Assembly: GCA_964234715.1 (NCBI GenBank)
Contig: OZ174276.1
Length of the DNA: 64,000 nt
DNA from: Podarcis melisellensis
Lineage: Eukaryota
Strand: one strand, 5' to 3'
Part shown: piece after piece, positions 10,114 through 28,081 of the stretch
How the letters are laid out: each line of letters starts with the position of its first letter
Position numbering within the stretch: position 1 is the first letter of the stretch
Notes under the pieces: model-generated
Seen by the model: only the letters and a program-made list of their open reading frames with translations
Database searches by the model: none
Told to the model about the DNA's origin: nothing
Made by a program: the position numbers and the translations under genes

Positions 10114-10970
10114 GTATGGCACGGAAAGCTGCCTGAGATATACCCATGGCTTAAGGTGGAGATAGGAATGTTTTGACTCTTAACATTCTGCAAGTTGAGT
10201 GTGTATATTTTACAGATGCTTTGCAGAGTTGTGTGTGTGTGGTTTTGGCACAACTTTTAAAGCGTACACACTAAAATGGTTCATTTGTTTGAAGTAGTTG
10301 ATTTGAATACTTTTCAAGGATCTGGTAGAGTCAGGCTTCAGTATCAAACTCTCTTGGGCTAGGGCAATGCTACAAACAAAGTCCAATTTGAACAGAGTCC
10401 AAATACAAAAAGAAGAAAATGGGAGAAAACAGTGAGTGTGTGCTGAACAGTTGACCAGCTAAAACTAGGTGGGACTGTGAATCACCAAACATTGTGGCTC
10501 TTTTAGTTGCCCCAAGATTCATGAAGACTTTTTGGCTGTCACATGGAGGGGAGAAGCATTGATAATGTTTTTGAGGAGCTTGTGCTCCTCTAATCAAAAT
10601 GGCTGTCAATATCTAGGCCCCTTTGCATGTTGGCAGGGGTGCCTTACTTTTTGAGAACCAGGAGATTGGGGTCAAAAGGTGCCAGTTTTAAAAAAGAGAT
10701 TACTCAGCTATTTCTGGTAGACTTGAGTAGCTCAAAAGTGCCTCTGGTGTATACTAGAAAATGCCAGGTAATATGTGAGCTGGGGAACTTCACAACATGG
10801 TTAAACTAGGCTAGAAGCAAAGCATATTAATTTCTTAAAAGCAAAAGGCTGCTGATAGTGATGTTGGGCACAACATGGTAGCTTTCTCTTCCTCCCCCCC
10901 CCCCCCAATATGTTTGAAAATGGTTTTGCCTGCTGAAGCTAGTGAGATTCCCATGAATATATATTTTCAG

Positions 10971-11059
10971 GACCTTGCTGCCTCCGAGAGAGCCAGACGC
11001 CATGCAGAGCAAGAGAGAGATGAGCTGGCTGATGAAATTGCCAACAGTGCCTCTGGAAA
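10971..11059 (+). CDS. MYH10: MYH10 exon, [29 protein letters not shown](K) (89 nt)
   Basis: ttttcag| acceptor, |GTAAGT donor, phase 0->2. Confidence 0.97.
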
Positions 11060-11188
11060 GTAAGTAACTCCGGGTAGACTTCTCCACCTATGGCAGCCAT
11101 TATGTGGCAGAAGTGTTCTGTGTCTGCAGCAGTTGCTGCGCAAACCTCAATACATGTGACTGCAGCTAAATAGCTGAGTTTGTACTGA

Positions 11189-11630
<442 letters not shown>

Positions 11631-11877
11631 TAAGCACGGCACACTCTGAAAATAGTGTTTCCAGGAGGCTGAATCATGATTTGATATTTAAAAAGCACAA
11701 TTTATTCTGAAACACCTTTTCTGGTAGCTATTAATGAAACAAGATAGTCATCCAGCAAGAAGCTTGCAAGCCCAAGGAATAATAATCATCCAGTGCAGGC
11801 ATTTGTGTGATCTTACTCAAGTTTTATTTCTGATGGTGTGATTTATTGCTTTGATGTTAGCACTGCTTAATGCAGAT

Positions 11878-12010
11878 CAGTGGTGGCCAAACTTGGCCTT
11901 CCAGGTGTTTTGGGACTACAATTCCCATCCCTGACAACTGGTCCTGTTAGCTAGGGATGATGAGAGTTGTAGTCCCAAATCAGCTGGAGGGCCATGTCTG
12001 GCCACCAGTG
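11878..12010. mobile_element. hAT/Charlie-like palindromic MITE
   Basis: TIR-like cagtggtggccaaac...tctggccaccagtg; internal inverted gggactacaa / ttgtagtccc. Confidence 0.75.
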
Positions 12011-12039
12011 CTCTAGATGGTTATGCGTACCCACTTCAT

Positions 12040-12565
12040 CATCATCACCATTATTTTTTCTATTATTATTCATTTATGAATCTATTCTCATGCAACACCT
12101 CAAAGTGATTTCTTATAACATATATAAAACAATACATAAATAAAAACAGTTAAAACAATTGCATACATAATACAGTTTTAAAGATAACTGTAAATATAAA
12201 AACAGCAGCATACACATAAAACTCTGTTCAAATCCAAAACAAATACCAGCTGGGATACAGATTTTAGAAGGTTTGTTGAAAGTGGAATGATGCTAGCAGG
12301 TGCTGAAAAGGCAACAGAGATGGCACCTGACCGATATGCAATGGAAGGGAGTTCCAAATGGTAGCTGTTGCCACACTAAAGGCCTCATTCTGACATCATA
12401 TGGAACGATCTCCTAAATGAATGATAATTGCAGGTTGCCCACTTGTGCTGGAATCGGTGATCAGTTGGGTATGTAGGGAATGAGGCAAACTATCAAGTAT
12501 CCTGGTCCCAGGTTCTGTAGGGCTTCATACACTAATACCAGCACTTGAACCTAGCCTGGTAGCTA
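12040..12565 (-). mobile_element. Old L2-like LINE 3' fragment
   Basis: Degenerate similarity to the reverse complement of the L2 3' end at 53250-53620; limits approximate. Confidence 0.55.
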
Positions 12566-12714
12566 ATTATTCTCACTAGTGCTTTATTTTTCTGCTATGG
12601 GTTCATGGAGCCTTCACCTCTGGTTGGTATACATTTGGGCTCTGTTACACTAATGACTAGTCTGTTACCTTTTTGACGTAAGTTGAGTGATCCTGCTCTA
12701 TTGACTTACCTTAG

Positions 12715-12823
12715 GGAGAGAGCAGCAGCCAACAAGCTAGTACGTCGGACAGAGAAGAAGCTGAAGGAGGTGTTCATGCAGGTCGAGGATGAGCGCCGAC
12801 ATGCAGATCAGTACAAAGAACAG
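12715..12823 (+). CDS. MYH10: MYH10 exon, [18 protein letters not shown]...DQYKEQ (109 nt)
   Basis: ccttag| acceptor, CAG|GTGAGG donor. Confidence 0.97.
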
Positions 12824-13828
12824 GTGAGGAACTACCTGTGCCACTTAGAATCTCTGCTGTGCCTAGCTGACTATAGAAAATTTTCCCTGCTAATGCACAT
12901 CGGGAAGCATGGCAGGTTGTTTACAATGGCCTGTATTTTGGACGGGGAAGGAACCTCAGAACTGGAGGCTGAGAATACTCCCTGGTGACTTCCCTTCCTT
13001 GGCCACAACCTCTTTCTCCAGGCCAACCCCCCTCACTGGTCCTTCATCGCACTCTCCTTGAGTGTTTTTGCATGGCTGAAATGTGTCTGAACTCTGATAA
13101 TGCCTCCTGCTTGTCTGGATGAAGGAAAGAAATAGGTGTGTGAGAGTGGGTGCAGAAAGTAGCCTTAAAATCGAATTCAGCGTCCCACCCACTTTTGCTG
13201 CTGTTCCCCACCCACCACTGGAATGTACTCCCAGAAGGGTGTCCAGGAGGGAATGTTCCCCTTGGGCTGAAAAGGTTCTTCACCCTTGGCCAATAACCTC
13301 CATAAAGTTCTTTAAGTGAGCAGGCGTGTGCACATCCTGCAGCATCTCTGCTGCTATGGTTCCCATTCACTTGGGTGTGGAGTCAGGCGGGGGGGGGGGG
13401 GGCTTGTGCAAGCCTCTCCTGCAGCCCATTCAAATTTCTGCTTCTCTGATCTGGAGTAATTGCAAATGACTGAACTATACCTTCAGGAGAAGGGTATTTC
13501 TGGAGCATGCAACTTCTTGCCATAAGGTTTTAAAAAAACAAAACTCAGGTAGTGCATTAGAGAAGAGTTCAACCAAAGTTTTGCCAAATCCATGTGAGCA
13601 GCGCAGGCAGCCAAGGCAGCCAGCACTGTCTGCTTTGTGAAAGTGGATGAAGTCATCAGTGTGCTACATGGACATCCCACAGCATATGGAGACCGAAAGA
13701 TTGTTATGCTGCTGCCAGAGGTTCTCTGTCTCGAAAAGGGAGTGTAAGTGAAAGAGGATCTCTAATCTCCTCTGGAGTGTCGTGTGGATGTTTCTTTCAT
13801 GGGGCCTGTTTCTGATAATGCTCTGTAG

Positions 13829-14002
<174 letters not shown>

Positions 14003-14696
14003 TGAGTCATGTGGTGGAAGGAAGGTCAAGGCAGGTGTGGGCAAATGCTTCGGGGCGGGTCGCTTTTGAGTTGTTGTGTGGGGCTCATTTGATTCACCAT
14101 TTCCAGTTCTCTCCCTCCCCCAGTTTGTGATAGCTCAACTCTAATGTGGTCCAGAATTTAATGGGAAAGTGATGTTGAGTAGCCAGAATTGAGCATTATG
14201 CTTGAAATGTAATGTAGCACTAAGTAGGGGATGTGGCCCTCTCAACAACAGGACATTCCCCAACCCCCCAGAGCAGATTAAGGGGGGGTGAAGCAGGAGG
14301 GGAGTCCTGTTGTGTGTGCGCACACAACAATTTTGTTGAATCCCACCTCATGTCTACAGGGTCAGATCATTAGCTGATTGTGTGCCAAGTAGGCTGAGCA
14401 CAGGCTTCTTACGACAAATGGCCCTACTCAACTCCTATACCAACGAATGAGAGGGCAGAGTGATGTATCCTAAGCTATAGCCACACAGGTAGCAGTCATA
14501 GCTGTAGGCTTAAGTCTATCACTGGAAACATGATTTAAGTGGTATTGTGATCCTCATCTGTGAGCGCCATGGTCTCAATGAGGGGGACTCCTTTATGCTA
14601 ATGTGGGGCATGGTGGGTAGCTAGACATCCTTTCTCTGTGGAGCAAAGGTCTTATGTCCTTCCAACAACTCACTCCTTTCCCTCTTCCTCATATAG

Positions 14697-14841
14697 GAGG
14701 GGCGGCCCAATCACGTTTTCCTCCAGCCGATCCGGGAGGCGCCAGCTGCACATTGAAGGGGCTTCCCTGGAGCTTTCAGATGACGACGCAGAGAGTAAAG
14801 GCAGTGATATCAATGAGCCGCAGGCTGCCCAAACAGAGTAG
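14697..14841 (+). CDS. MYH10: MYH10 last coding exon, non-helical tailpiece [47 protein letters not shown]
   Basis: Pyrimidine tract plus atatag|; tailpiece distinguishes NMHC-IIB from MYH9/MYH11/MYH14; TAG at 14839-14841. Confidence 0.97.
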
Positions 14842-18480: not shown

Positions 18481-18571
18481 TCATACACTCAGAGGGAGCA
18501 TGCCTGGTGCTGATGATGGTCTGGACCCTCCTAGACCTGGTGGTGGGCCTTGGTCAAAGCCATTGACTGCC
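18481..18571 (-). CDS. NDEL1: NDEL1 last coding exon, [29 protein letters not shown]
   Basis: ttccacag| acceptor; the ...GMLPLSV C-terminus identifies NDEL1 rather than NDE1. Confidence 0.96.
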
Positions 18572-19250: not shown

Positions 19251-22200
19251 TAATGCCTTAGCATTACCACACAACCAAACACAGAAATTATCATCCAAGT
19301 TTTCCGGTCTATCAGAAAGCTATGAGAAGTATAAAACGCACAATATGCATTGACCAAACATCACACCTCCATGTAGAGGTGCTCCCGGATGCCACACAAA
19401 TACCAAACCAACCCCTGTTTCTACCTCTTGCTCTTAGCCTAATCTCCAGTTGAAAAACTAGAGAAGGGGACTCATAATTTACCACAAGTCCCCAGAGCTA
19501 GGCTGCATGCAAATGTGGGACACACTCCTGCTGCTGCAACCCGGAAGAAAAGCAAAAATGAATTACATAAAGGACTAGGTGGCTCACAGAGCTAGTTAAA
19601 TCTTTGCTGTGGGCTGTGTTACAATAGCTAAGAAATAGGTCTCAAATTCAATTATTCAAAAGTTGCAGAAGTGTTTCAGAGTTAGTTAGTTTTGCCAATG
19701 AATTGGAATTCCCATTGGTTCAATCTATATAATTGTGCCCTACACCCACAGCAAACTCTTCATTTAAGTAGAGGTTTCAGTGAATGGAAGTCCTGTTTTG
19801 CAAATTCCCCTTTTCTCCTGTCAAGGCCCTCCCCCCCCCACACACACTTCAAGGGCTCCCCAACTCTCTGGAATGTGTGTGCACACAGTGGACTGCAGAG
19901 GCCAGGGGGAATTCATATAAGCCTCTGATAGATCAAGAAACCATTTATTAGCAGAATATAATTGGATGCAACCCCCTAGCTACTTTTAGTGTGGTAGAGA
20001 CAGAGAAGATGTTTATGATGCTAATGAACAGAAAAGTGTCAAGGGAGAATGGCCAGATCCATCGCATTGGACATTGAGACAGGGTGATAGAACATGTTGA
20101 ATGACCTAGCCATTATATGCTCCATCCAGGTCAAGTGGTTTTGCACAAATTGCCTGTGTTTTCAAAATTTGCAATCCAATCACCAAGAATTGGGGTGATG
20201 CCAGATTATGTACTAGAAGGTGGATTCAGAAAGTTCCAGCAAGGTCATGGTTATGCATAGTTCTAGGCTCCCAAACCTACAGGCAGGGGACAACACTTCT
20301 GGAATACAAACATTCACTGATGAGGAGTCCAACTCCTAAACAGACCTGAACTTGTTGACTAGTATTCCCAGATACACTAATGTGGTGTTACCCACAAAAT
20401 ATGTACACATCCCTTTGAATATACTGATGTTTATTTCCAATTTCAGGTTTTTAAATGTACTAGGCTTGGACACAAATTAAGCACACAGTGATGATGCTGA
20501 AGTGAAACCCAATATATATGTCCAAACTTTCTCCCACTACATAGCTTGTCCCATACTGGACAGAGACAATTCCTACACAGATTGCAGCTGGAGGCTGCAT
20601 CACAGCTATGGAAGTTCACTTAGCACTGAAAAGAGAGTGTCGTGGTCAATTGTACAATTCACTGATTAGCAGGCATCTAGTGGACTGCTAGGGCTTCCCA
20701 GGGCAAGCTAAATGATGGTGGTGTGAGCCCTACAGATAAGAAAAACTATTTCTAGGTCACAGATATTCTGAAGATGGCTTAAGGCAATTATAGGCTAACC
20801 TGTTCCTACAAAAACCACGCAAAGTGCTGGGGCTAGTCACACAAGGGATGTCATGGTAACAGCTGAGAACTGAGGTACAAGACTGTTCAAATTCAGGCCA
20901 TTCACTGAACTGTAGTTCTGATGCAATAAAGCCCTAGCGAACTGTCAGTCAGCCATTTCTAGCCTACTTATCTCCTTAGAACTGGCTGAGGCAGGAGGCC
21001 CATTAAAGCCTCCCTCTGCCTTCCTGATTCAACAGCAGATTGAGCTGGAGAAACGCTGCATCAATATGAGCAGGCAAAGCTTCTTGCCTGTGGCATACTT
21101 CTCACTCAAACAGCAGAAGTGACTACATTCAGCAGTGACTTCCTCTCCCCCTACTTAAGCTGAAATCTATTGACAAAGAATGAATAGGGAGGTAGGGGAA
21201 TGCCCTTCTCCCTTCAAGGCCTTTCCGCTCCATTTTTCAATGCAAAAGAAAAGACGCTGTGGAACAAAATCTAAAACTTATGAACTATTTTCACTTTTGG
21301 AATTATGGACAGGGCAAGCATCTGCTTTACCTGATGAAGGTCCCAGACTTAATCTCTAGGTAGAGCTGGGAGAAACTCCCTGACTGAAACCCTAGAGAGC
21401 CAATATATCAGTGTAGACAATAATGAGCTATAGGGACCAATGATTAGGCAGCTTTCTGTATTTGAGCAAAAGGACTTCACTTCCCCCTCCTCATCTGCAA
21501 CAGACTTCCACACAATCAGAATTTTCTCTGAAGGGTCTCTAAACCTTCTGGAGCAGATTTTGGAGGTCTGTTGGTGGCAGGGGCAGAATGGAAGAACAGG
21601 TGAAATCTTGTTGGGCGAGTGGAATTCCACTGCATTGGAGCCAACCTAATGTGAATGACACCTTTTAATACAGGGCTTTAAAATATTGTTTCATCTTTAT
21701 CGTACTTCCTTAATTTCTGATGTAAAGTGTTAGGTACTTTTTGAAGACATGCACAATTCTTAATGCCTACTCCAAATTCCTCCAATTGAAATTTGAGCAT
21801 GAAATAAAATGATGCAAATTAAGTACACACTGAATTAAGAAACAAGCTAACATGCAAATATTGTTTCAAGCAGCAAACCTTCAGTTCACAGATTATGGAG
21901 AAGGAAACAGAAAATTGGAATCCACTGATCTTTCAGAAATGATCATGATTAGAAACAAATTTCATTGTGGGTATTTTCAAGGGTGTGCTTTAGTGTTCAA
22001 TTAGGGTTTCATGTGGCTTATTTAGGGCATTTTTACCCTTGCCTTCCACACTTGCTGTGTGCTAATGACTAAAGAACTCAATCCTGTTATATAGGTGGAA
22101 CCATTTTAGGCACGTCCAACTGGCACGATTGCAGACGCACAGGTCCTGTTGGAACCGGATGAAGGCTTATATGCACTCCACTGACGCGTATGGGGGCTGG

Positions 22201-25200
22201 GTACAGAACCCCTGCATGAAAAGGTCACCATCTGAATATAAAGCAGATATATATGAATCTTGCTTGTGATATGTGGTATCAATCCACTATCCCCTCATGT
22301 GTCTCCAGATTTTTTTTTATTAATTTTTTTTTCCCATTTCTGGATAAATGCTATGGACGGTGGACTGTTTCAAGGCCTAATTGTTAAAAAACTTTCATTT
22401 TGCTTATCACGATACTGATTGTTCCTGCTTTATGTGATCATTCCCCCCCCCCCATATTTTTACAAAAATAAGTTATCTTTATGCAATGTAAGCTTCAGCA
22501 GGTAGTAACTCTATTTCTGGGCCTATTTGTAATTGATGCTCAAATACAACTAAGGCATTTGTTTTAAAAATTTCATTAAATTTTACTGTTTGCTAAAGTA
22601 CTAACTTTACACAATACATTTTATATTCAAGTTTGAAATTGATGAATAAGTACTTATATATATATTATTTTGTCTCAAAATTTCTAAGGGTTTGTTTTTC
22701 CATGGTTTGCAAATTTCCAGAAGTTTCATTTCTGTACACAGCGCACACCTCAAATCTGGCATGTATTTGTCCACTCAAATGGCATGCATGAAGAGGACAA
22801 GAGTTCAATAGAAGTATAGCATCCTGTTACGTAAAATCTATAAATCTAGTTACATGGCAATAAAAACCAAAAACCAATTCAGACACAAGATTAGTATCTC
22901 AGCCCCACACATCCCTGATAGGTGACACACACTCTCATCTCCACGCATCAGGCATCACACCAAAACAGTTGCAATTACCCATGAAATGTGCAGAGAATCT
23001 GACCTATCCAAAAAGGAGAGATGGAAACAATTCATATTGAAAACATCTGTTATGTCAAAAGACTTCCAGGCATCACTAATGAAATTGAGGTTCTTGAAGT
23101 CAATTTAGGAACTAGTATTAAAGCCAAAGGTGGGGAATTGCTTTCCAACTTCCACCAAGCATAGCACTAAAACAGCAAGATTAGAGTTGCCTAAAATCAA
23201 TCCAGTTTACCATCTCATGTGTACCTTGCTTTGGGAACACTTTGCTGTTAGGGGTTCTACCTGCACAACTGGCATTCATGTATATTGTATATATTTCTAA
23301 TAATATAGTCAGTGATCCTTAATGGCCTACCAGAGACCATTTTAAGTACGAGCTTGTACAACGTCAATACAGCTGTGTTTAGAATTTGATATCGCTGTAC
23401 ATTAATGCTAACATAAGGTACAAAGACACCAGCATGGAATTCTGGCTTGGGCTGGGATCTAAAGCGTGCTCTGCTGATGGTGCTCTCATTCTGCAATAGA
23501 AACGTGTGCTACTACAACGCAAGCAATTGTACTCTTGGCAATGAGATCTAAAGCAGGATGAGATATAAACCCTCCAAGGATTGCATATACACACCTGCCT
23601 TCATATCACATGCATTCACTCCCCCAGCCAACTTGGCTTGAAAAGAGTATTTTGGGGTTTTTGAAGCCCAGCTCCTGGAGGAGGGATGGATTTTCTGGAG
23701 ATTGCAAATGGGCTGTGACAGACCATCACAACAATTAGGCTTGAGAAAAACCTTCTACTGTGGGCAACAGAAGGCTATTTATCAAGTTTAATTGCAGAGC
23801 ACAGGAAGTTTTGGTGCAAAGGAAGTATTAACACTTTCCTTCCTAGGTGTGACAAACTGAAATGCTCTGGGAATAGCCTTTTTTTCATATTTAATTGTAG
23901 CAAGGAAGGGAACATTGTAGGCCAGATGGGGAGGTCTTAGGGATGACATATATCCCACAGGCCTATGGTTCCTCATCCCTAGTCTAACAAGCTCAAAAGA
24001 CGAGTTTGCATGAAGTAATCTCAGCCACTTATCAGCCACCACCAATTTTCAGCATTACAAGGACATGAACAACTGGTTTATTCTCTGGTTCAGTCACAAT
24101 TTCCAACTTCACTTAAGCTCCCTTGGCTTCAAGTTTCAACAAATGACTTAGTTAACTTTCCATATAAGCAGCCCTTAACAAGTTGTTCCTGCATGTCACT
24201 AGGTAGGACAGTACCCACCACACCCCAATTTAATATCCACTCAATTTCAATGCACCATAGAGAGTCAACAGTGTAAACAATTGCTACTAGCAGAACATTG
24301 GCAAAGCCAGCAATAGAGCAATGTGTGAGTTACCTCAATCAGTCCCACCACCCAACCATAGGCCATTCATAAGGCAGCAGCAGCAGCAGATTGGGTTGGG
24401 TCCATAAACATGCGTGGCTGTTTCAGGATCCAGCGACAATTGGGGGCAGGGAGAAGACTACAGGGGCTAGAGAAAGAGAGAGAGAGAAAGAAACAAACAA
24501 ACAGGGGAGAAGGAGAAAAAAGAGCATGCCTAAGCTCACTTTCCATGCCCTAGCCAGCATGGCAATAAGATGGTAGCCAATTCACAATTACTCAGAAGGG
24601 CTTAAAAATATGCAAAAAATAAATCGCAGGTGGACTGAAAGGGAGGGTGGGGGAGAGACAAGGAGAAGCAGCAAAGGAAGAGGGACAGGATGCAGGGCCA
24701 CAGAGTGTCAACATCGGGGCAAAAAGCAGAAGGAACTGAGAAAAGAAGAGTGGCCTTTGACTCTTCTATGCACGCTCCTGAACAACTTGAATACCTCCCT
24801 GCTTGCTGCTCAAGAAAACCCTGTGTATCTGCTTCATGAGATATAGCTCGTCGTTGTTATTTGTTCTACAGCACTACCTTGAAGACAGGATCACCAGATC
24901 TCTGTTAGACATATTCTTCAAGAGACAAGCTGCGAGAATCCCCTAACCACTGCCCAAAAGTAGGACTGCAGCTGCCTAACAGTACTGTTTACCAATTCTG
25001 TTGTTTCAGGTCTGTACTAGTTACTATAAACAACAGGGAGTTCTGCACTGAATGGGATATGGCATAGTGCAAGGTGAGGTCAGGGACTGGCAAAAAAAAA
25101 GGGGGACCAAACAGAAAGAAATTATTTCTGCAAAAGTGCAGAATGAGACTTGGGAAAACCTGAAGAGAATTTTGGAGAGAGATTTGTAAGAGGAAAACCA

Positions 25201-25774
25201 GGGTGTTCTAAAGGGATGAGCAGAAAGCAAAAAGAGGAGAGGGCAACAAAAACTAAGCCAATATAAGATGAGCTTAAGCAGATAAAAAGCACAAAGGACC
25301 TGAAAAGAGACACAAGACGAGGACTGATGCAGCAATAGAGGGATAACACAAAATATACACAAACCATGAATACTTCCAGCGGGTCAACTGCATGTTGCAT
25401 TACACAAACCAGCCCAGCATGCAGCCCAGCATGAAGTGACCCTTTCCTACCTTACAATCTGCTTACTGTTCACAGTATGGCTCAAGATAGCAAGCGTGGG
25501 TTTTAAGAGGCTTGCCTCTGGATTCATGACCATGAGAAGCAAATCACACATTGAAGGCACACCCAATTCACATTGAGACTAAGTGTATCCACAAGCAATT
25601 TCCTATCCCACCTTTGTGCAAATGGCAAAGATGCAGCTTGGTCTGTAAGCTATACAGAAAACATCATTAAGCCAGGCACAAAGGCAGCCAGCAGAGCTTC
25701 TACTTTCATTTCCCCTCCCAAACTTCTGCTTATGTGGATTTAGTTTTGCACATGAAAGATGTACCACACTTTGT

Positions 25775-26150
25775 CCTAATCACACTTAGTCACATCTAGG
25801 TTAGACTGCTGTCTTGAGGTCTGTCAGGGGCTGCCTTTGAAAAAGGTACTAGAAATGCAGCTGTTAAGATTGCAACTGGTGCAGGCTGAATGGAACATAA
25901 CACTTCAGTTTTGCAACAACTTCATTGCCTAACTCCCTGTTTATTTCACCTAAACAATCTCTGTGCAGGATAATTTAAGGATGACCCTGATCCTCCACAA
26001 GCCAAAGTATGGGGGAAGGTGGCATAGGGCAGGGCTTTCTTTGCAGTGGCTCCAAATCTCTGCAAAAAGAGTAGGAACATGGTTGACCATACACTATTTA
26101 AAACCTCACAAATGCTCAAGGCAGCATAGCTCCCGAAACTTTTCAAACAA
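25775..26150 (+). mobile_element. Old L2-like LINE fragment
   Basis: Degenerate ttagactgctg...ggggctgccttt...gcaactggtgca...gggctttctttgcagtggctcc, paralleling 53080-53460. Confidence 0.5.
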
Positions 26151-26532
26151 ACAGCTCTTAACTAGAGCTGGACCGATATTTTTGGCACAGCTCTTTTTGC
26201 CCATTTGCAGGGGAGGGGCATAAAAGGCTAGAATAATTTTTGCCCCAAATTGGGAAAGAGCAGAAGAAATTTCTGAGAAAGTTCTCTCAGTGAAAAGAGT
26301 GGAAGGGGCTTACCTTGCGTTCTATAATGAAATTACCAAGAGTGTGGATCATTTCAAACATTCTCAAGTTTGTCTTCCTGTACTTGATATGACAGAGGAA
26401 GAGAACCTCCTTCACATTCTCTATGGCAGTGGTTGAGAAAACTCCAGCCCACAGGCTAATTTGTTCTGCCAGGAGTCCTTAATATGGCCTGTGAGGCCAT
26501 TTATCCTAAGCCATGCCCACCTGCCATCATAG

Positions 26533-26805
26533 GGAAAGGGACCCCTGGCCATTAGGTCCAGTCGGGACTGACTTTGGGGTTGCGGTGCTCATCTTGCTTT
26601 ATTGGCCGAGGGAGCCAGCGTACAGCTTCCGGGTCATGTGGCCAGCATGACTAAGCCGCTTCTGGCGAACCAGAGCAGCGCATGGAAATGCCATTTACCT
26701 TCCCGCGGGAGCGGTACCTATTTATCTACTTGCACTTTGACGTGCTTTCGAACTGCTAGGTTGGCAGAAGCAGGGACCGAGCAACGGGAGCTCACCCCAC
26801 TGCGG
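26533..26805 (-). mobile_element. Sauria SINE (5'-truncated)
   Basis: Reverse complement of the 62574-62931 element (gggtcatgtggccagcatgact, ggtacctatttatctacttgcac). Confidence 0.88.
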
Positions 26806-27692
26806 ATGGGGGAGCTAAGGATCTGGCTTACCAACCAAATTCTATTTCCCACCACTGCCGTATAGTTTAAAAAAATAAAAATTTGGATCAGGACAACTTT
26901 GTGCAGGAATGGGTGAGTTAACCCAACCCTTCCCCTTCATGATCTTACCTAAATCAGCACATACACAACGGCATGACAGTTAACACGCAGGAAAAAAGGT
27001 CCTGTTGACCTTAAACCCTCTGCCTCCTCATTCTAAGAAGTAAAGTGAATCCAAGCCCACCACTACCCACAACATTTTCTTCTGTCCATCTTGAAATCTA
27101 ATGGAAAACATATTCATTTTCCCAGGGGGACAAATGGTCCAACAAATATGAGGGTGGGAGTTCAGCTCACCACCATTACTAACCAACATTCTGTTAGACA
27201 TACGTGGTAGCCATGATGGAATACTCCTGAGTTTCACTGATGGCATGTGAAGGCTAGGTTGTTTCTTACTTAACAAGCTTCACTTAACTCTTGGGAAGAA
27301 ACCAAAGCATGAAGTGTCACAGTAAGCCAAACAAATCTGACCTCATGATGCCTTGCTTATTTTGAGTGATGTTCCACTATTTGCTATTAACACCTTTCCC
27401 CAACTGTACAGAACACTCTAAAGGGCCCACTACAATTTCTTGAAGGTTGCCAAGCCAGCTTCCTAGCGCTACAGCTTAGGTGCCAAATTGGAGAACATGA
27501 AAGCTCAGATTCGCATCCACAGAGAGTCAATGTATCCTGTTCTCTGGCTTAACAAGAGGCCTGTAGATGATGGGCTTCCATAAGTTGCACCCTATAACCA
27601 CAGGAAATATGTCCATAGGCCAAAGGTTGGAAGCTTTTGTCTATTAGCATACAAACTACATCCCTGAAAGATTGAGCACAACGAGAACTTAC

Positions 27693-27844
27693 GCTTTGTC
27701 ATAGAATGTCGTGTGTCCTGAATGACAGAACTTCATGCCATTGCTGTTTATCATGCTGCTGTTTATGTTCCCTGAAATGTAAGATTTCCGCGATGCCTGG
27801 TCCTTCGCAAAGTTTCTACAAGCAGCTAATTTTGATTCCAAGGC
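27693..27844 (-). CDS. NDEL1: NDEL1 exon 8, ALESKLAACRNFAKDQASRKSYISGNINSSMINSNGMKFCHSGHTTFYDK (152 nt)
   Basis: ttctcag| acceptor, GC|GTAAGT donor; includes the Cys273-equivalent in LAACRN. Confidence 0.96.
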
Positions 27845-28081
27845 CTGAGAAAGAAGTAGATAACAGAGCTTTTTATTTAAAGTAATTTGCCTTAATGAGG
27901 GAATAGGAGAAATAGAATCAACATCAGCAGATTCAACAAAATATAAGATGGAGCAATGACTCAGAGCAGTCAGTCAATCTTCTGATTCCACTTATGTCAC
28001 ATTCTTAGTAAGAGAAGCTGATTTGAAAAGTCTGCTCTTGAATAGAACATGGATTCCCAAATGCAGGACAGGCCAGAATTC

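What the first reader, a model, noticed from the sequence alone, without database searches (positions are those of the whole stretch)
22979..23003. 25-nt microexon candidate in the last NDEL1 intron resembling the mammalian 'QEKVIFPTLFMGQ' isoform exon
Seen: the - strand reads ttgtttccatctctcctttttggatag|GTCAGATTCTCTGCACATTTCATGG|gtaatt, with a clean pyrimidine tract, AG and GT. Read in phase 0 it encodes VRFSAHFM+G. Downstream lie UG-rich sequence, ACTAAT (QKI motif, 22890-22895) and TGCATG (RBFOX motif, 22783-22788). Established (from memory): mammalian NDEL1 has a short isoform whose cassette exon in this intron encodes QEKVIFPTLFM(GQ*), the same V-x-F-x-x-x-F-M-G pattern. Inference: this is the reptile counterpart but lacks the first ~10 nt. 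Spliced straight to exon 8 it reads in another frame (ASDSLHISW, then GSQWL* in the last exon), so it needs a 3n+1 partner exon to give the mammal-like frame.
Basis: partly seen in the sequence, partly recalled or inferred. Interest (0 to 1): 0.72.

Follow-up and report, generated by a model that had tools for sequence, protein, structure and literature searches.

The report
Squamate 25-letter NDEL1 switch exon
The 25-letter candidate in this lizard's NDEL1 gene is very probably a real mini-exon: it is the lizard-and-snake version of a 35-letter switch exon found from fish to mammals, shortened by 10 letters at its front so that it writes a different 14-residue protein tail.

Summary
The sequence is exactly as described: AG | 25 nt | GT at 23003-22979 on the minus strand, between NDEL1 exon 8 (27844-27693) and the last exon (from 18571).

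It is orthologous to the vertebrate 35-nt NDEL1 cassette exon, which gives the "NDEL1-FMGQ" isoform. Marmot, finch and turtle carry that 35-nt exon at the same place, and the lizard's 25 nt align to its last 25 nt. Among five squamates the exon is the conservation peak of the intron (0.90 identity against 0.2-0.5).

In all five the ancestral acceptor AG is gone. The AG of the old Lys codon, 10 nt further in, now serves as the acceptor.

No partner exon is needed. RefSeq isoforms of Sceloporus, two Anolis species, Pituophis and Eublepharis end in (A/T)SDSL(H/Q)(I/M)SW plus G(S/N)Q(W/R)(L/F/V)*. That is this exon spliced straight between exon 8 and the last exon; the window gives ASDSLHISW + GSQWL*. 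Four of five variable sites are third codon positions in this new frame.

No junction was seen in contigs of four runs from related lizards, so use in this genome rests on orthology.

The isoform is annotated in other squamates, but I found no description of it in the papers I could search. The scan had not noted it on other DNA.

The parts
27693..27844 (-). NDEL1 exon 8 (ALESKLAACRNF...TTFYDK plus two spare bases GC); upstream splice partner of the microexon
   Evidence: A spliced contig of run X6 ends exactly at 27693 (record 30).
23004..23040 (-). 3' splice site of the microexon: pyrimidine tract, TAG acceptor, and no other AG in the 40 nt upstream. The ancestral acceptor position (23015-23014) reads CT.
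   Evidence: Conserved among squamates at 0.77 identity. Finch, turtle and marmot have their AG 10 nt further upstream.
22979..23003 (-). 25-nt cassette microexon. The first G completes the Ala codon GC|G; the rest reads SDSLHISW.
   Evidence: The tail is identical to RefSeq squamate isoforms P0168, P0188, P0186 and P0163.
22929..22978 (-). 5' splice site GTAATT and a conserved downstream intron block (GTAAnTG..TTTGG.GTGATG...TGC-rich). It contains YGCY-type motifs that could bind MBNL.
   Evidence: 0.75 and 0.62 identity. Its start is recognisable in turtle, finch and marmot. MBNL binding is inferred only.
22890..22895 (-). ACTAAT, a QKI-type motif
   Evidence: Kept in the window and Sphaerodactylus only; also present in finch.
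22783..22788 (-). TGCATG, an RBFOX-type motif, about 190 nt downstream of the exon inside a conserved block
   Evidence: Aligned and intact in all five squamates.
18554..18571 (-). Start of the last exon as read after the microexon: GSQWL then stop (TGA at 18556-18554)
18481..18571 (-). Coding part of the last exon in the canonical frame ([29 protein letters not shown], stop at 18483-18481)
24334..24466 (-). A second alternative exon in the same intron, 133 nt, with its own stop at 24369-24367. Tail PCSLLPAPNCRW...SAAAAAL, shared by sauropsids.
   Evidence: An X6 contig at 24332-24460 has depth 39.9 against 6-8 for the intron.

Best explanation
23003-22979 (minus strand) is a real, regulated 25-nt cassette exon of NDEL1. 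It is the squamate derivative of the ancient 35-nt cassette that produces the short NDEL1-FMGQ isoform in other bony vertebrates. In a common ancestor of geckos, iguanians and snakes the original acceptor AG was lost and became part of the pyrimidine tract. Splicing moved 10 nt inward to the AG of the old Lys codon (AAG|GTC in finch and turtle). The exon therefore shifts the frame by +1 instead of +2. When it is included between exon 8 and the last exon, the canonical 30-residue C-terminus (..MLPLSV) is replaced by a 14-residue tail. In this genome that tail is ASDSLHISW from the exon junction plus GSQWL and a stop in the last exon. Because the stop lies in the last exon, the mRNA should escape nonsense-mediated decay and make a protein. 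Shown here: orthology, the splice-site change, squamate-wide conservation, and the match to annotated isoforms. Inferred: that the exon is spliced in this species; that inclusion is promoted by factors bound downstream (conserved TGCATG for RBFOX, TGC-rich block for MBNL, as reported for the mammalian exon); and that the functional effect is removal of the canonical tail with its reported SH3 and 14-3-3 motifs, with or without a role for the new peptide.
For: The sequence is as described. The per-exon translations are SDSLHISW and GSQWL*. RefSeq 328/329-aa isoforms end in ASDSLHISWGNQRF (Sceloporus), ASDSLHISWGSQRL (Anolis carolinensis and A. sagrei), ASDSLHISWGSQRV (Pituophis) and TSDSLQMSWGSQWL (Eublepharis). 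Genomic DNA of Sceloporus, Anolis, Thamnophis and Sphaerodactylus has the same AG|25 nt|GTAA unit between the PCS exon and the last exon. In each, the last exon gives the annotated tail end in the +1 frame. Finch, leatherback turtle and marmot have a 35-nt exon there, with the acceptor 10 nt upstream and tails (R/Q)EKVIFPTL(V/F)MGQ*. The same tail type appears in frogs, coelacanth and ray-finned fishes. The lizard and finch blocks are reciprocal best matches. There is a conservation peak of 0.90 at the exon. Four of five variable sites are third positions in the squamate frame (hypergeometric P = 0.024). No other AG lies in -40..-3. Literature: the exon is 35 nt in human erythroblasts with delta-PSI +46 (PMC3973340); the mouse exon depends on MBNL1 (PMC10835012); NDEL1 is named among the genes with RBFOX/QKI co-target exons, although that text does not say which exon (PMC13751310); the NDEL1-FMGQ isoform is named in PMC2631193.
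Against: There is no direct RNA evidence in this genome. In Logan contigs of four runs from related lizards (RNA status only guessed, tissues unknown), contigs run unspliced through the exon at intron depth, and no joint 27693>23003 or 22979>18571 was listed. The loose-end table was crowded out by a repeat, so the fate of the exon 8 donor could not be read. The RefSeq XP_ proteins are predicted models whose transcript support I could not inspect. The close relatives differ at 2 of 25 exon bases, one of them a His>Arg change, so the constraint is not absolute. The codon-position test rests on five sites.
Confidence: 0.85

Rival explanations
1. It is a decaying relic. The block descends from the 35-nt cassette, but since the ancestral acceptor was lost it is no longer meaningfully spliced in this species. 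The annotated squamate isoforms would then reflect rare or noisy splicing.
For: No junction contig was found in four runs, and contigs pass straight through the exon. The ancestral-frame peptide has diverged (VRFSAHFM against VIFPTLVM). Two of 25 bases differ in close relatives, against a background of about 3.8%.
Against: A relic would not stay the most conserved 25 nt of the intron across geckos, iguanians and snakes. It would not keep AG, GTAA, a clean AG-free pyrimidine tract and a -3 pyrimidine in every species. It would not restrict change to third positions of the new frame. Five independent genome annotations call the isoform.
Confidence: 0.1
2. One reading: the exon is read in the mammal-like frame (VRFSAHFMG...), made possible by an upstream 3n+1 partner exon such as one ending at 26314.
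For: The V-x-F-x-x-x-F-M-G resemblance is real. In Eublepharis isoform X2 a 31-nt (3n+1) extension does put the last exon into the +2 frame.
Against: That gecko extension lies downstream of the exon (an alternative donor), and the exon is still read as SDSLQMSW. No retrieved isoform has a VRF..FMG tail. Variable sites are first codon positions in that frame. The window has an in-frame TGA 22-24 nt into the intron and no GT at +32, so even the gecko variant is not available here. No contig joint touches 26314.
Confidence: 0.02
3. It is a chance splice-site look-alike in a long intron.
For: AG...GT pairs with pyrimidine tracts are common in 9 kb of intron.
Against: Orthology, the conservation peak and the match to annotated isoforms all speak against it.
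Confidence: 0.01

Closest known systems
Vertebrate NDEL1 35-nt cassette exon (isoform NDEL1-FMGQ; human and mouse, raised in late erythroblasts, MBNL1-dependent; NDEL1 is among the genes with predicted RBFOX/QKI co-target exons)
   Same: Same gene, same intron and same order relative to exon 8 and the last exon. The 3' 25 nt, the donor and the start of the downstream intron are homologous. Both are frame-shifting cassettes that swap the 30-residue PLSV end for a 14-residue tail with the stop in the last exon. Both have a downstream GCATG motif.
   Different: It is 25 nt, not 35. The ancestral acceptor is lost and an internal AG is used. The frame shift is +1, not +2. The tail is SDSLHISWGSQWL instead of (Q/R)EKVIFPTLFMGQ. 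In all five squamates examined the CAG-TGA/TAA stop of the +2 frame in the last exon is also gone (Val or Ile codon GTC/ATC).
RefSeq predicted NDEL1 isoforms of other squamates (Sceloporus undulatus X3 XP_042305075.1, Anolis carolinensis X3 XP_008102476.1, Anolis sagrei X3, Pituophis catenifer X4, Eublepharis macularius X4)
   Same: They encode the same exon and the same junction logic. The 8 residues SDSLHISW are identical to the window's in four of the five.
   Different: They are other species. The last five residues vary with the last exon (GSQWL here and in Eublepharis). These are database models only, and I found no paper describing them.
Neuronal microexons (27 nt or shorter, SRRM4/nSR100-dependent)
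   Same: The size class (25 nt), the strong conservation of exon and flanking intron, and the RBFOX motif nearby.
   Different: It is not a multiple of three, so it shifts the frame rather than inserting a few residues. No UGC element lies between the pyrimidine tract and the AG. Tissue pattern is unknown.

Membership tests
NDEL1 FMGQ-type cassette exon (orthology group) | Lies between NDEL1 exon 8 and the last coding exon, same strand and order | tested here: met
NDEL1 FMGQ-type cassette exon (orthology group) | Sequence homology to the cassette of other vertebrates | tested here: met
   20 of 30 positions match finch, and the blocks are reciprocal best local hits.
NDEL1 FMGQ-type cassette exon (orthology group) | 35 nt long (3n+2), with the acceptor directly before G-(C)NN-GAR-AAR | tested here: not met
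   The exon is 25 nt. Positions 23015-23014 read CT, and no AG lies in -40..-3 in the window or in three of the four other squamates; Thamnophis has one at -40 only.
NDEL1 FMGQ-type cassette exon (orthology group) | Encodes the (Q/R/K)E(K/R)V(I/F)FP(T/A)..(M/L)GQ* tail | tested here: not met
   It reads SDSLHISW + GSQWL*. Squamate isoforms show the same.
NDEL1 FMGQ-type cassette exon (orthology group) | Frame-shifting inclusion that replaces the PLSV C-terminus by a short tail ending in the last exon | tested here: met
   The tail is 14 residues in both versions.
NDEL1 FMGQ-type cassette exon (orthology group) | Splice junctions seen in RNA of this organism | tested here: inconclusive
   No joints appeared in contigs of four runs from related lizards. 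Contigs drop rare forms, and RNA status and tissue are unknown.
NDEL1 FMGQ-type cassette exon (orthology group) | Regulation by MBNL1, RBFOX or QKI | not testable with these tools
   Motifs only. TGCATG is conserved in five squamates and ACTAAT in two. The regulation is known from mammal papers.
Squamate 25-nt NDEL1 microexon (RefSeq isoform X3/X4 type) | AG|25 nt|GTAA unit encoding SDSL(H/Q)(I/M)SW in the frame set by exon 8 | tested here: met
SRRM4-type neuronal microexon | Length a multiple of 3, and a UGC element close upstream of the acceptor | tested here: not met
   25 nt is not a multiple of 3, and there is no TGC in 23004-23040.

The most novel reading that the evidence does not exclude
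Squamates carry a natural frame swap of a cassette exon that is more than 400 million years old. The switch itself (a short frame-shifting exon, a 14-residue tail, a downstream RBFOX site) was kept, but the encoded peptide was replaced, and the new peptide has since been held under purifying selection. If so, the essential job of the FMGQ-type isoform is to remove the canonical NDEL1 C-terminus (SH3 and 14-3-3 motifs), and the particular tail peptide matters less. That would make squamates a ready-made test of which part of the isoform matters for cell migration and erythroid maturation.
Probability: 0.4. Interest if true: 0.55.

Novelty: new variant of a known kind. Interest (0 to 1): 0.45.

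Why it matters
NDEL1 is a dynein/LIS1 regulator needed for neuronal migration and mitosis. Its 35-nt cassette is one of the largest splicing switches in late erythroblasts, and according to a review that cites the mouse study (PMC10835012; the primary paper was not held) only the exon-containing isoform partly rescues Ndel1 loss. This work shows that the cassette dates back at least to bony vertebrates. It also shows that one large clade kept the switch while changing the exon's length, frame and peptide. That gives a clean comparative handle on what the alternative C-terminus is for. It is also a tidy example of how a splice-site shift can rewrite a conserved alternative tail without destroying the regulated exon. 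For annotation, it shows that the 25-nt exon should be called in this genome with direct junctions. It also shows that the same intron holds a second conserved alternative exon.

Tried and rejected
1. blastn of the lizard intron against the finch locus found only exon 8 and the last exon. The microexon needed a fuzzy search and Smith-Waterman alignment.

2. The word-index protein search with exon 8 alone returned only exon-sized genomic ORF fragments because of its length window. Fish contigs fetched from those hits end about 300 nt after exon 8 and were useless.

3. Because that left the isoform question open, I used the costly exhaustive search once, with exon 8 by reference. This gave full-length ids, which fed the region search and the cluster listing.

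4. Look-ups of the short isoforms themselves failed, because only the longest product of a gene is on record. The longest isoforms worked.

5. The primary MBNL1 paper (PMC4110662) is not held. I cite it only through reviews.

6. I first guessed that the extra tail of an Anolis Ensembl model came from the window's 22231 candidate. One search showed that it is read-through of the microexon donor, so I rejected that guess.

7. The Rhineura isoform X4 tail has no convincing counterpart in the window.

8. Rfam gave nothing for the 26.5-26.8 kb repeat.

9. I did not search with a joined exon 8 + microexon + last exon model. Each exon was translated or searched by reference on its own, and the tails were compared with stored proteins.

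Full report
**Observation.**
NDEL1 exon 8 is 27844-27693. It starts in phase 0 and ends with two spare bases, GC. The last exon starts at 18571 and carries the canonical end [29 protein letters not shown], with its stop at 18483-18481.

**What the mammalian exon is.**
The literature held here describes a 35-nt NDEL1 cassette exon.
- In human erythroblasts it is one of the biggest switches, with delta-PSI +46 from proerythroblast to orthochromatic stage (PMC3973340, Table 2).
- In mouse its inclusion depends on MBNL1, and only the exon-containing isoform partly rescues Ndel1 loss (review PMC10835012; the primary paper was not held).
- NDEL1 is named among the genes carrying the 20 human exons predicted to be co-regulated by RBFOX and QKI (PMC13751310). 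The text read there does not say which NDEL1 exon is meant.
- The protein product was named NDEL1-FMGQ, as opposed to the canonical NDEL1-PLSV. The PLSV tail alone carries a potential SH3-binding motif and a putative 14-3-3 site (PMC2631193).

**Orthology.**
I obtained comparison loci through protein look-ups.
- The finch Chloebia (L001) has, in the same intron, an acceptor AG, 35 nt and GTAAAT at 13629-13663. With its exon 8 and last exon this reads G-REKVIFPTLVMGQ-stop.
- The lizard's 25 nt plus donor match the last 25 nt plus donor of that exon at 20 of 30 positions. This was the best fuzzy hit in the 3.9-kb intron.
- The two blocks are reciprocal best local alignments. None of 200 shuffles and 1 of 100 shuffles reach the score.
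- The leatherback turtle (L008) and the marmot (L010, 17863-17897) have the same 35-nt exon in the same position.
- At protein level the tail (Q/R/K)E(K/R)V(I/F)FP(T/A)..(M/L)GQ* is annotated in mammals, birds, turtles, frogs, coelacanth and ray-finned fishes (Brienomyrus, Megalops, Conger).
- The cassette is therefore at least as old as bony vertebrates.

**The squamate change.**
- Genomic loci of Sceloporus, Anolis carolinensis, Thamnophis and Sphaerodactylus (L005, L009, L006, L007) all carry the same unit as the window: a TAG acceptor, 25 nt, then GTAA.
- None has an AG where the ancestral acceptor was, and no AG occurs from -40 to -3, except one at -40 in Thamnophis.
- The AG that squamates use aligns with the last two bases of the Lys codon AAG of finch and turtle. 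Marmot has AAA there.
- The exon thus lost its first 10 nt, which became pyrimidine tract.
- Among the five squamates the 25-nt bin holding the exon is the most conserved of a 1.8-kb alignment: 0.90 identity, neighbours 0.77 and 0.75, background mostly 0.2-0.5.

**Which frame is used.**
- Translated exon by exon and by reference, the window gives SDSLHISW for the exon (after GC|G = Ala) and GSQWL-stop at the start of the last exon.
- RefSeq isoforms of 328 or 329 residues end in ASDSLHISWGNQRF (Sceloporus undulatus X3), ASDSLHISWGSQRL (Anolis carolinensis X3 and A. sagrei X3), ASDSLHISWGSQRV (Pituophis X4) and TSDSLQMSWGSQWL (Eublepharis X4).
- The last five residues of each are what that lineage's last exon (the same species, or a snake or gecko relative) gives in the +1 frame.
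- The five variable sites of the exon are positions 10, 13, 15, 16 and 19. Four are third codon positions in the squamate frame and first positions in the mammal-like frame (hypergeometric P = 0.024).
- In the ancestral frame the peptide drifts (VRFSAHFM, VRFPTYFM, VRFPTNVM). In the new frame it stays SDSLHISW, or SDSLQMSW in geckos.
- A further trace of the frame switch lies in the last exon. In finch (GTG) and turtle (GTA) the Val codon creates the CAG-TGA or CAG-TAA stop that ends ..MGQ. All five squamates have GTC or ATC there, and the +2 frame then runs on to ..HHQV.

**The partner-exon idea.**
- Eublepharis isoform X2 does contain 31 extra nucleotides (3n+1) that put the last exon in the +2 frame. 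One search shows that they are an extension past the microexon's donor (an alternative donor downstream), and the exon is still read SDSLQMSW.
- An Anolis Ensembl model simply reads on into the intron.
- In the window, read-through hits TGA after seven codons and there is no GT at +32.
- No retrieved protein has a VRF..FMG-type tail.

**RNA evidence.**
It found eighteen small runs guessed to be RNA from four other organisms, and DNA-like runs. I laid four runs from four studies on 21960-27950.
- They come from relatives about 3-4% diverged.
- The intron is covered at depth 4-13 and exon 8 at 50-100.
- A spliced contig ends exactly at 27693.
- Contigs run unbroken through the microexon, and no joint to 23003 or from 22979 was listed.
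- A very high-copy repeat at 26531-26800 filled the loose-end table, so the partners of the exon 8 donor could not be read.
- Contigs drop rare forms, and contigs that resemble human DNA are removed silently.
- This is therefore weak negative evidence only.
- The relatives carry two changes in the exon: one synonymous and one His>Arg.

**Regulation (inferred).**
- TGCATG about 190 nt downstream sits in a block that aligns in all five squamates.
- Turtle and finch have GCATG copies 30-45 nt downstream.
- ACTAAT is kept only in the window and the gecko among squamates.
- The first 50 nt of the downstream intron are conserved and rich in TGC/YGCY.
- By established position rules for RBFOX and MBNL, downstream binding should promote inclusion. 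That was not tested here.

**Verdict.**
The feature is a squamate-specific 25-nt version of a known, ancient cassette exon.

The isoform already exists in RefSeq models of other squamates. I found no paper on it: a search for NDEL1 with squamate and alternative splicing gave none. The scan's only other NDEL1 note (s1-512595) concerns a different candidate, at 22037-22231 in this same window.

**Method notes.**
- I used the exhaustive protein search once. The word search is limited by query length and had returned only exon-sized fragments.
- I did not search with a joined spliced model; exons were handled one by one by reference.

Noticed in passing
window 24334-24466 (minus strand): A second alternative NDEL1 exon lies in the same intron. 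It is 133 nt, with a CT-rich tract and AG acceptor and a GAG|GTAACT donor. It encodes (A)PCSLLPAPNCRWILKQPRMFMDPTQSAAAAAL with a stop at 24369-24367, only 33 nt before the donor. The same tail is the RefSeq 'isoform X1' end in squamates, turtles and birds, and it was not seen in the mammal proteins listed. An X6 contig covers 24332-24460 at depth 39.9, against 6-8 for the intron.
   Followed up: partly
window 26531-26800: A very high-copy repeat. Depth is 10^4 to 4x10^5 in all four runs, with many loose ends carrying a tRNA-like GGGGATTCGAACC core. It is probably a tRNA-derived SINE. There was no Rfam match. It swamped the loose-end table of the reads tool.
   Followed up: partly
L007 25064-25094 (Sphaerodactylus) and protein P0160 (Eublepharis X2): Geckos appear to have an alternative donor 31 nt downstream of the microexon. 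That gives a 56-nt (3n+2) exon, which puts the last exon into the ancestral +2 frame (..[13 protein letters not shown]).
   Followed up: partly
window 18560-18571 and the last exons of L001, L005-L009: The residue-2 codon (Val or Ile) of the last exon is GTC or ATC in all five squamates but GTG in finch and GTA in turtle. Only the latter two create the stop that ends the ..MGQ tail. In squamates, loss of that stop goes together with the frame change of the cassette.
   Followed up: yes
window 24160-26560: In run X5 (organism B) the intron stretch between exon 8 and the 133-nt exon has about four times the depth of the stretch below it (about 23 against about 6). This may be intron retention or an unannotated transcript end.
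   Followed up: no
window 22037-22231: This is the neighbouring candidate exon noted earlier by the scan. None of the squamate isoform tails retrieved here maps to it, and the Anolis and gecko extra tails come from the microexon's donor region instead. No contig joint touches 22231.
   Followed up: partly
L001 (Chloebia) 10816-14742: tblastn did not find the PCS-type 133-nt exon in the finch intron, although chicken, kiwi and grouse proteins carry that tail. It may have been lost or have diverged in this passerine.
   Followed up: no
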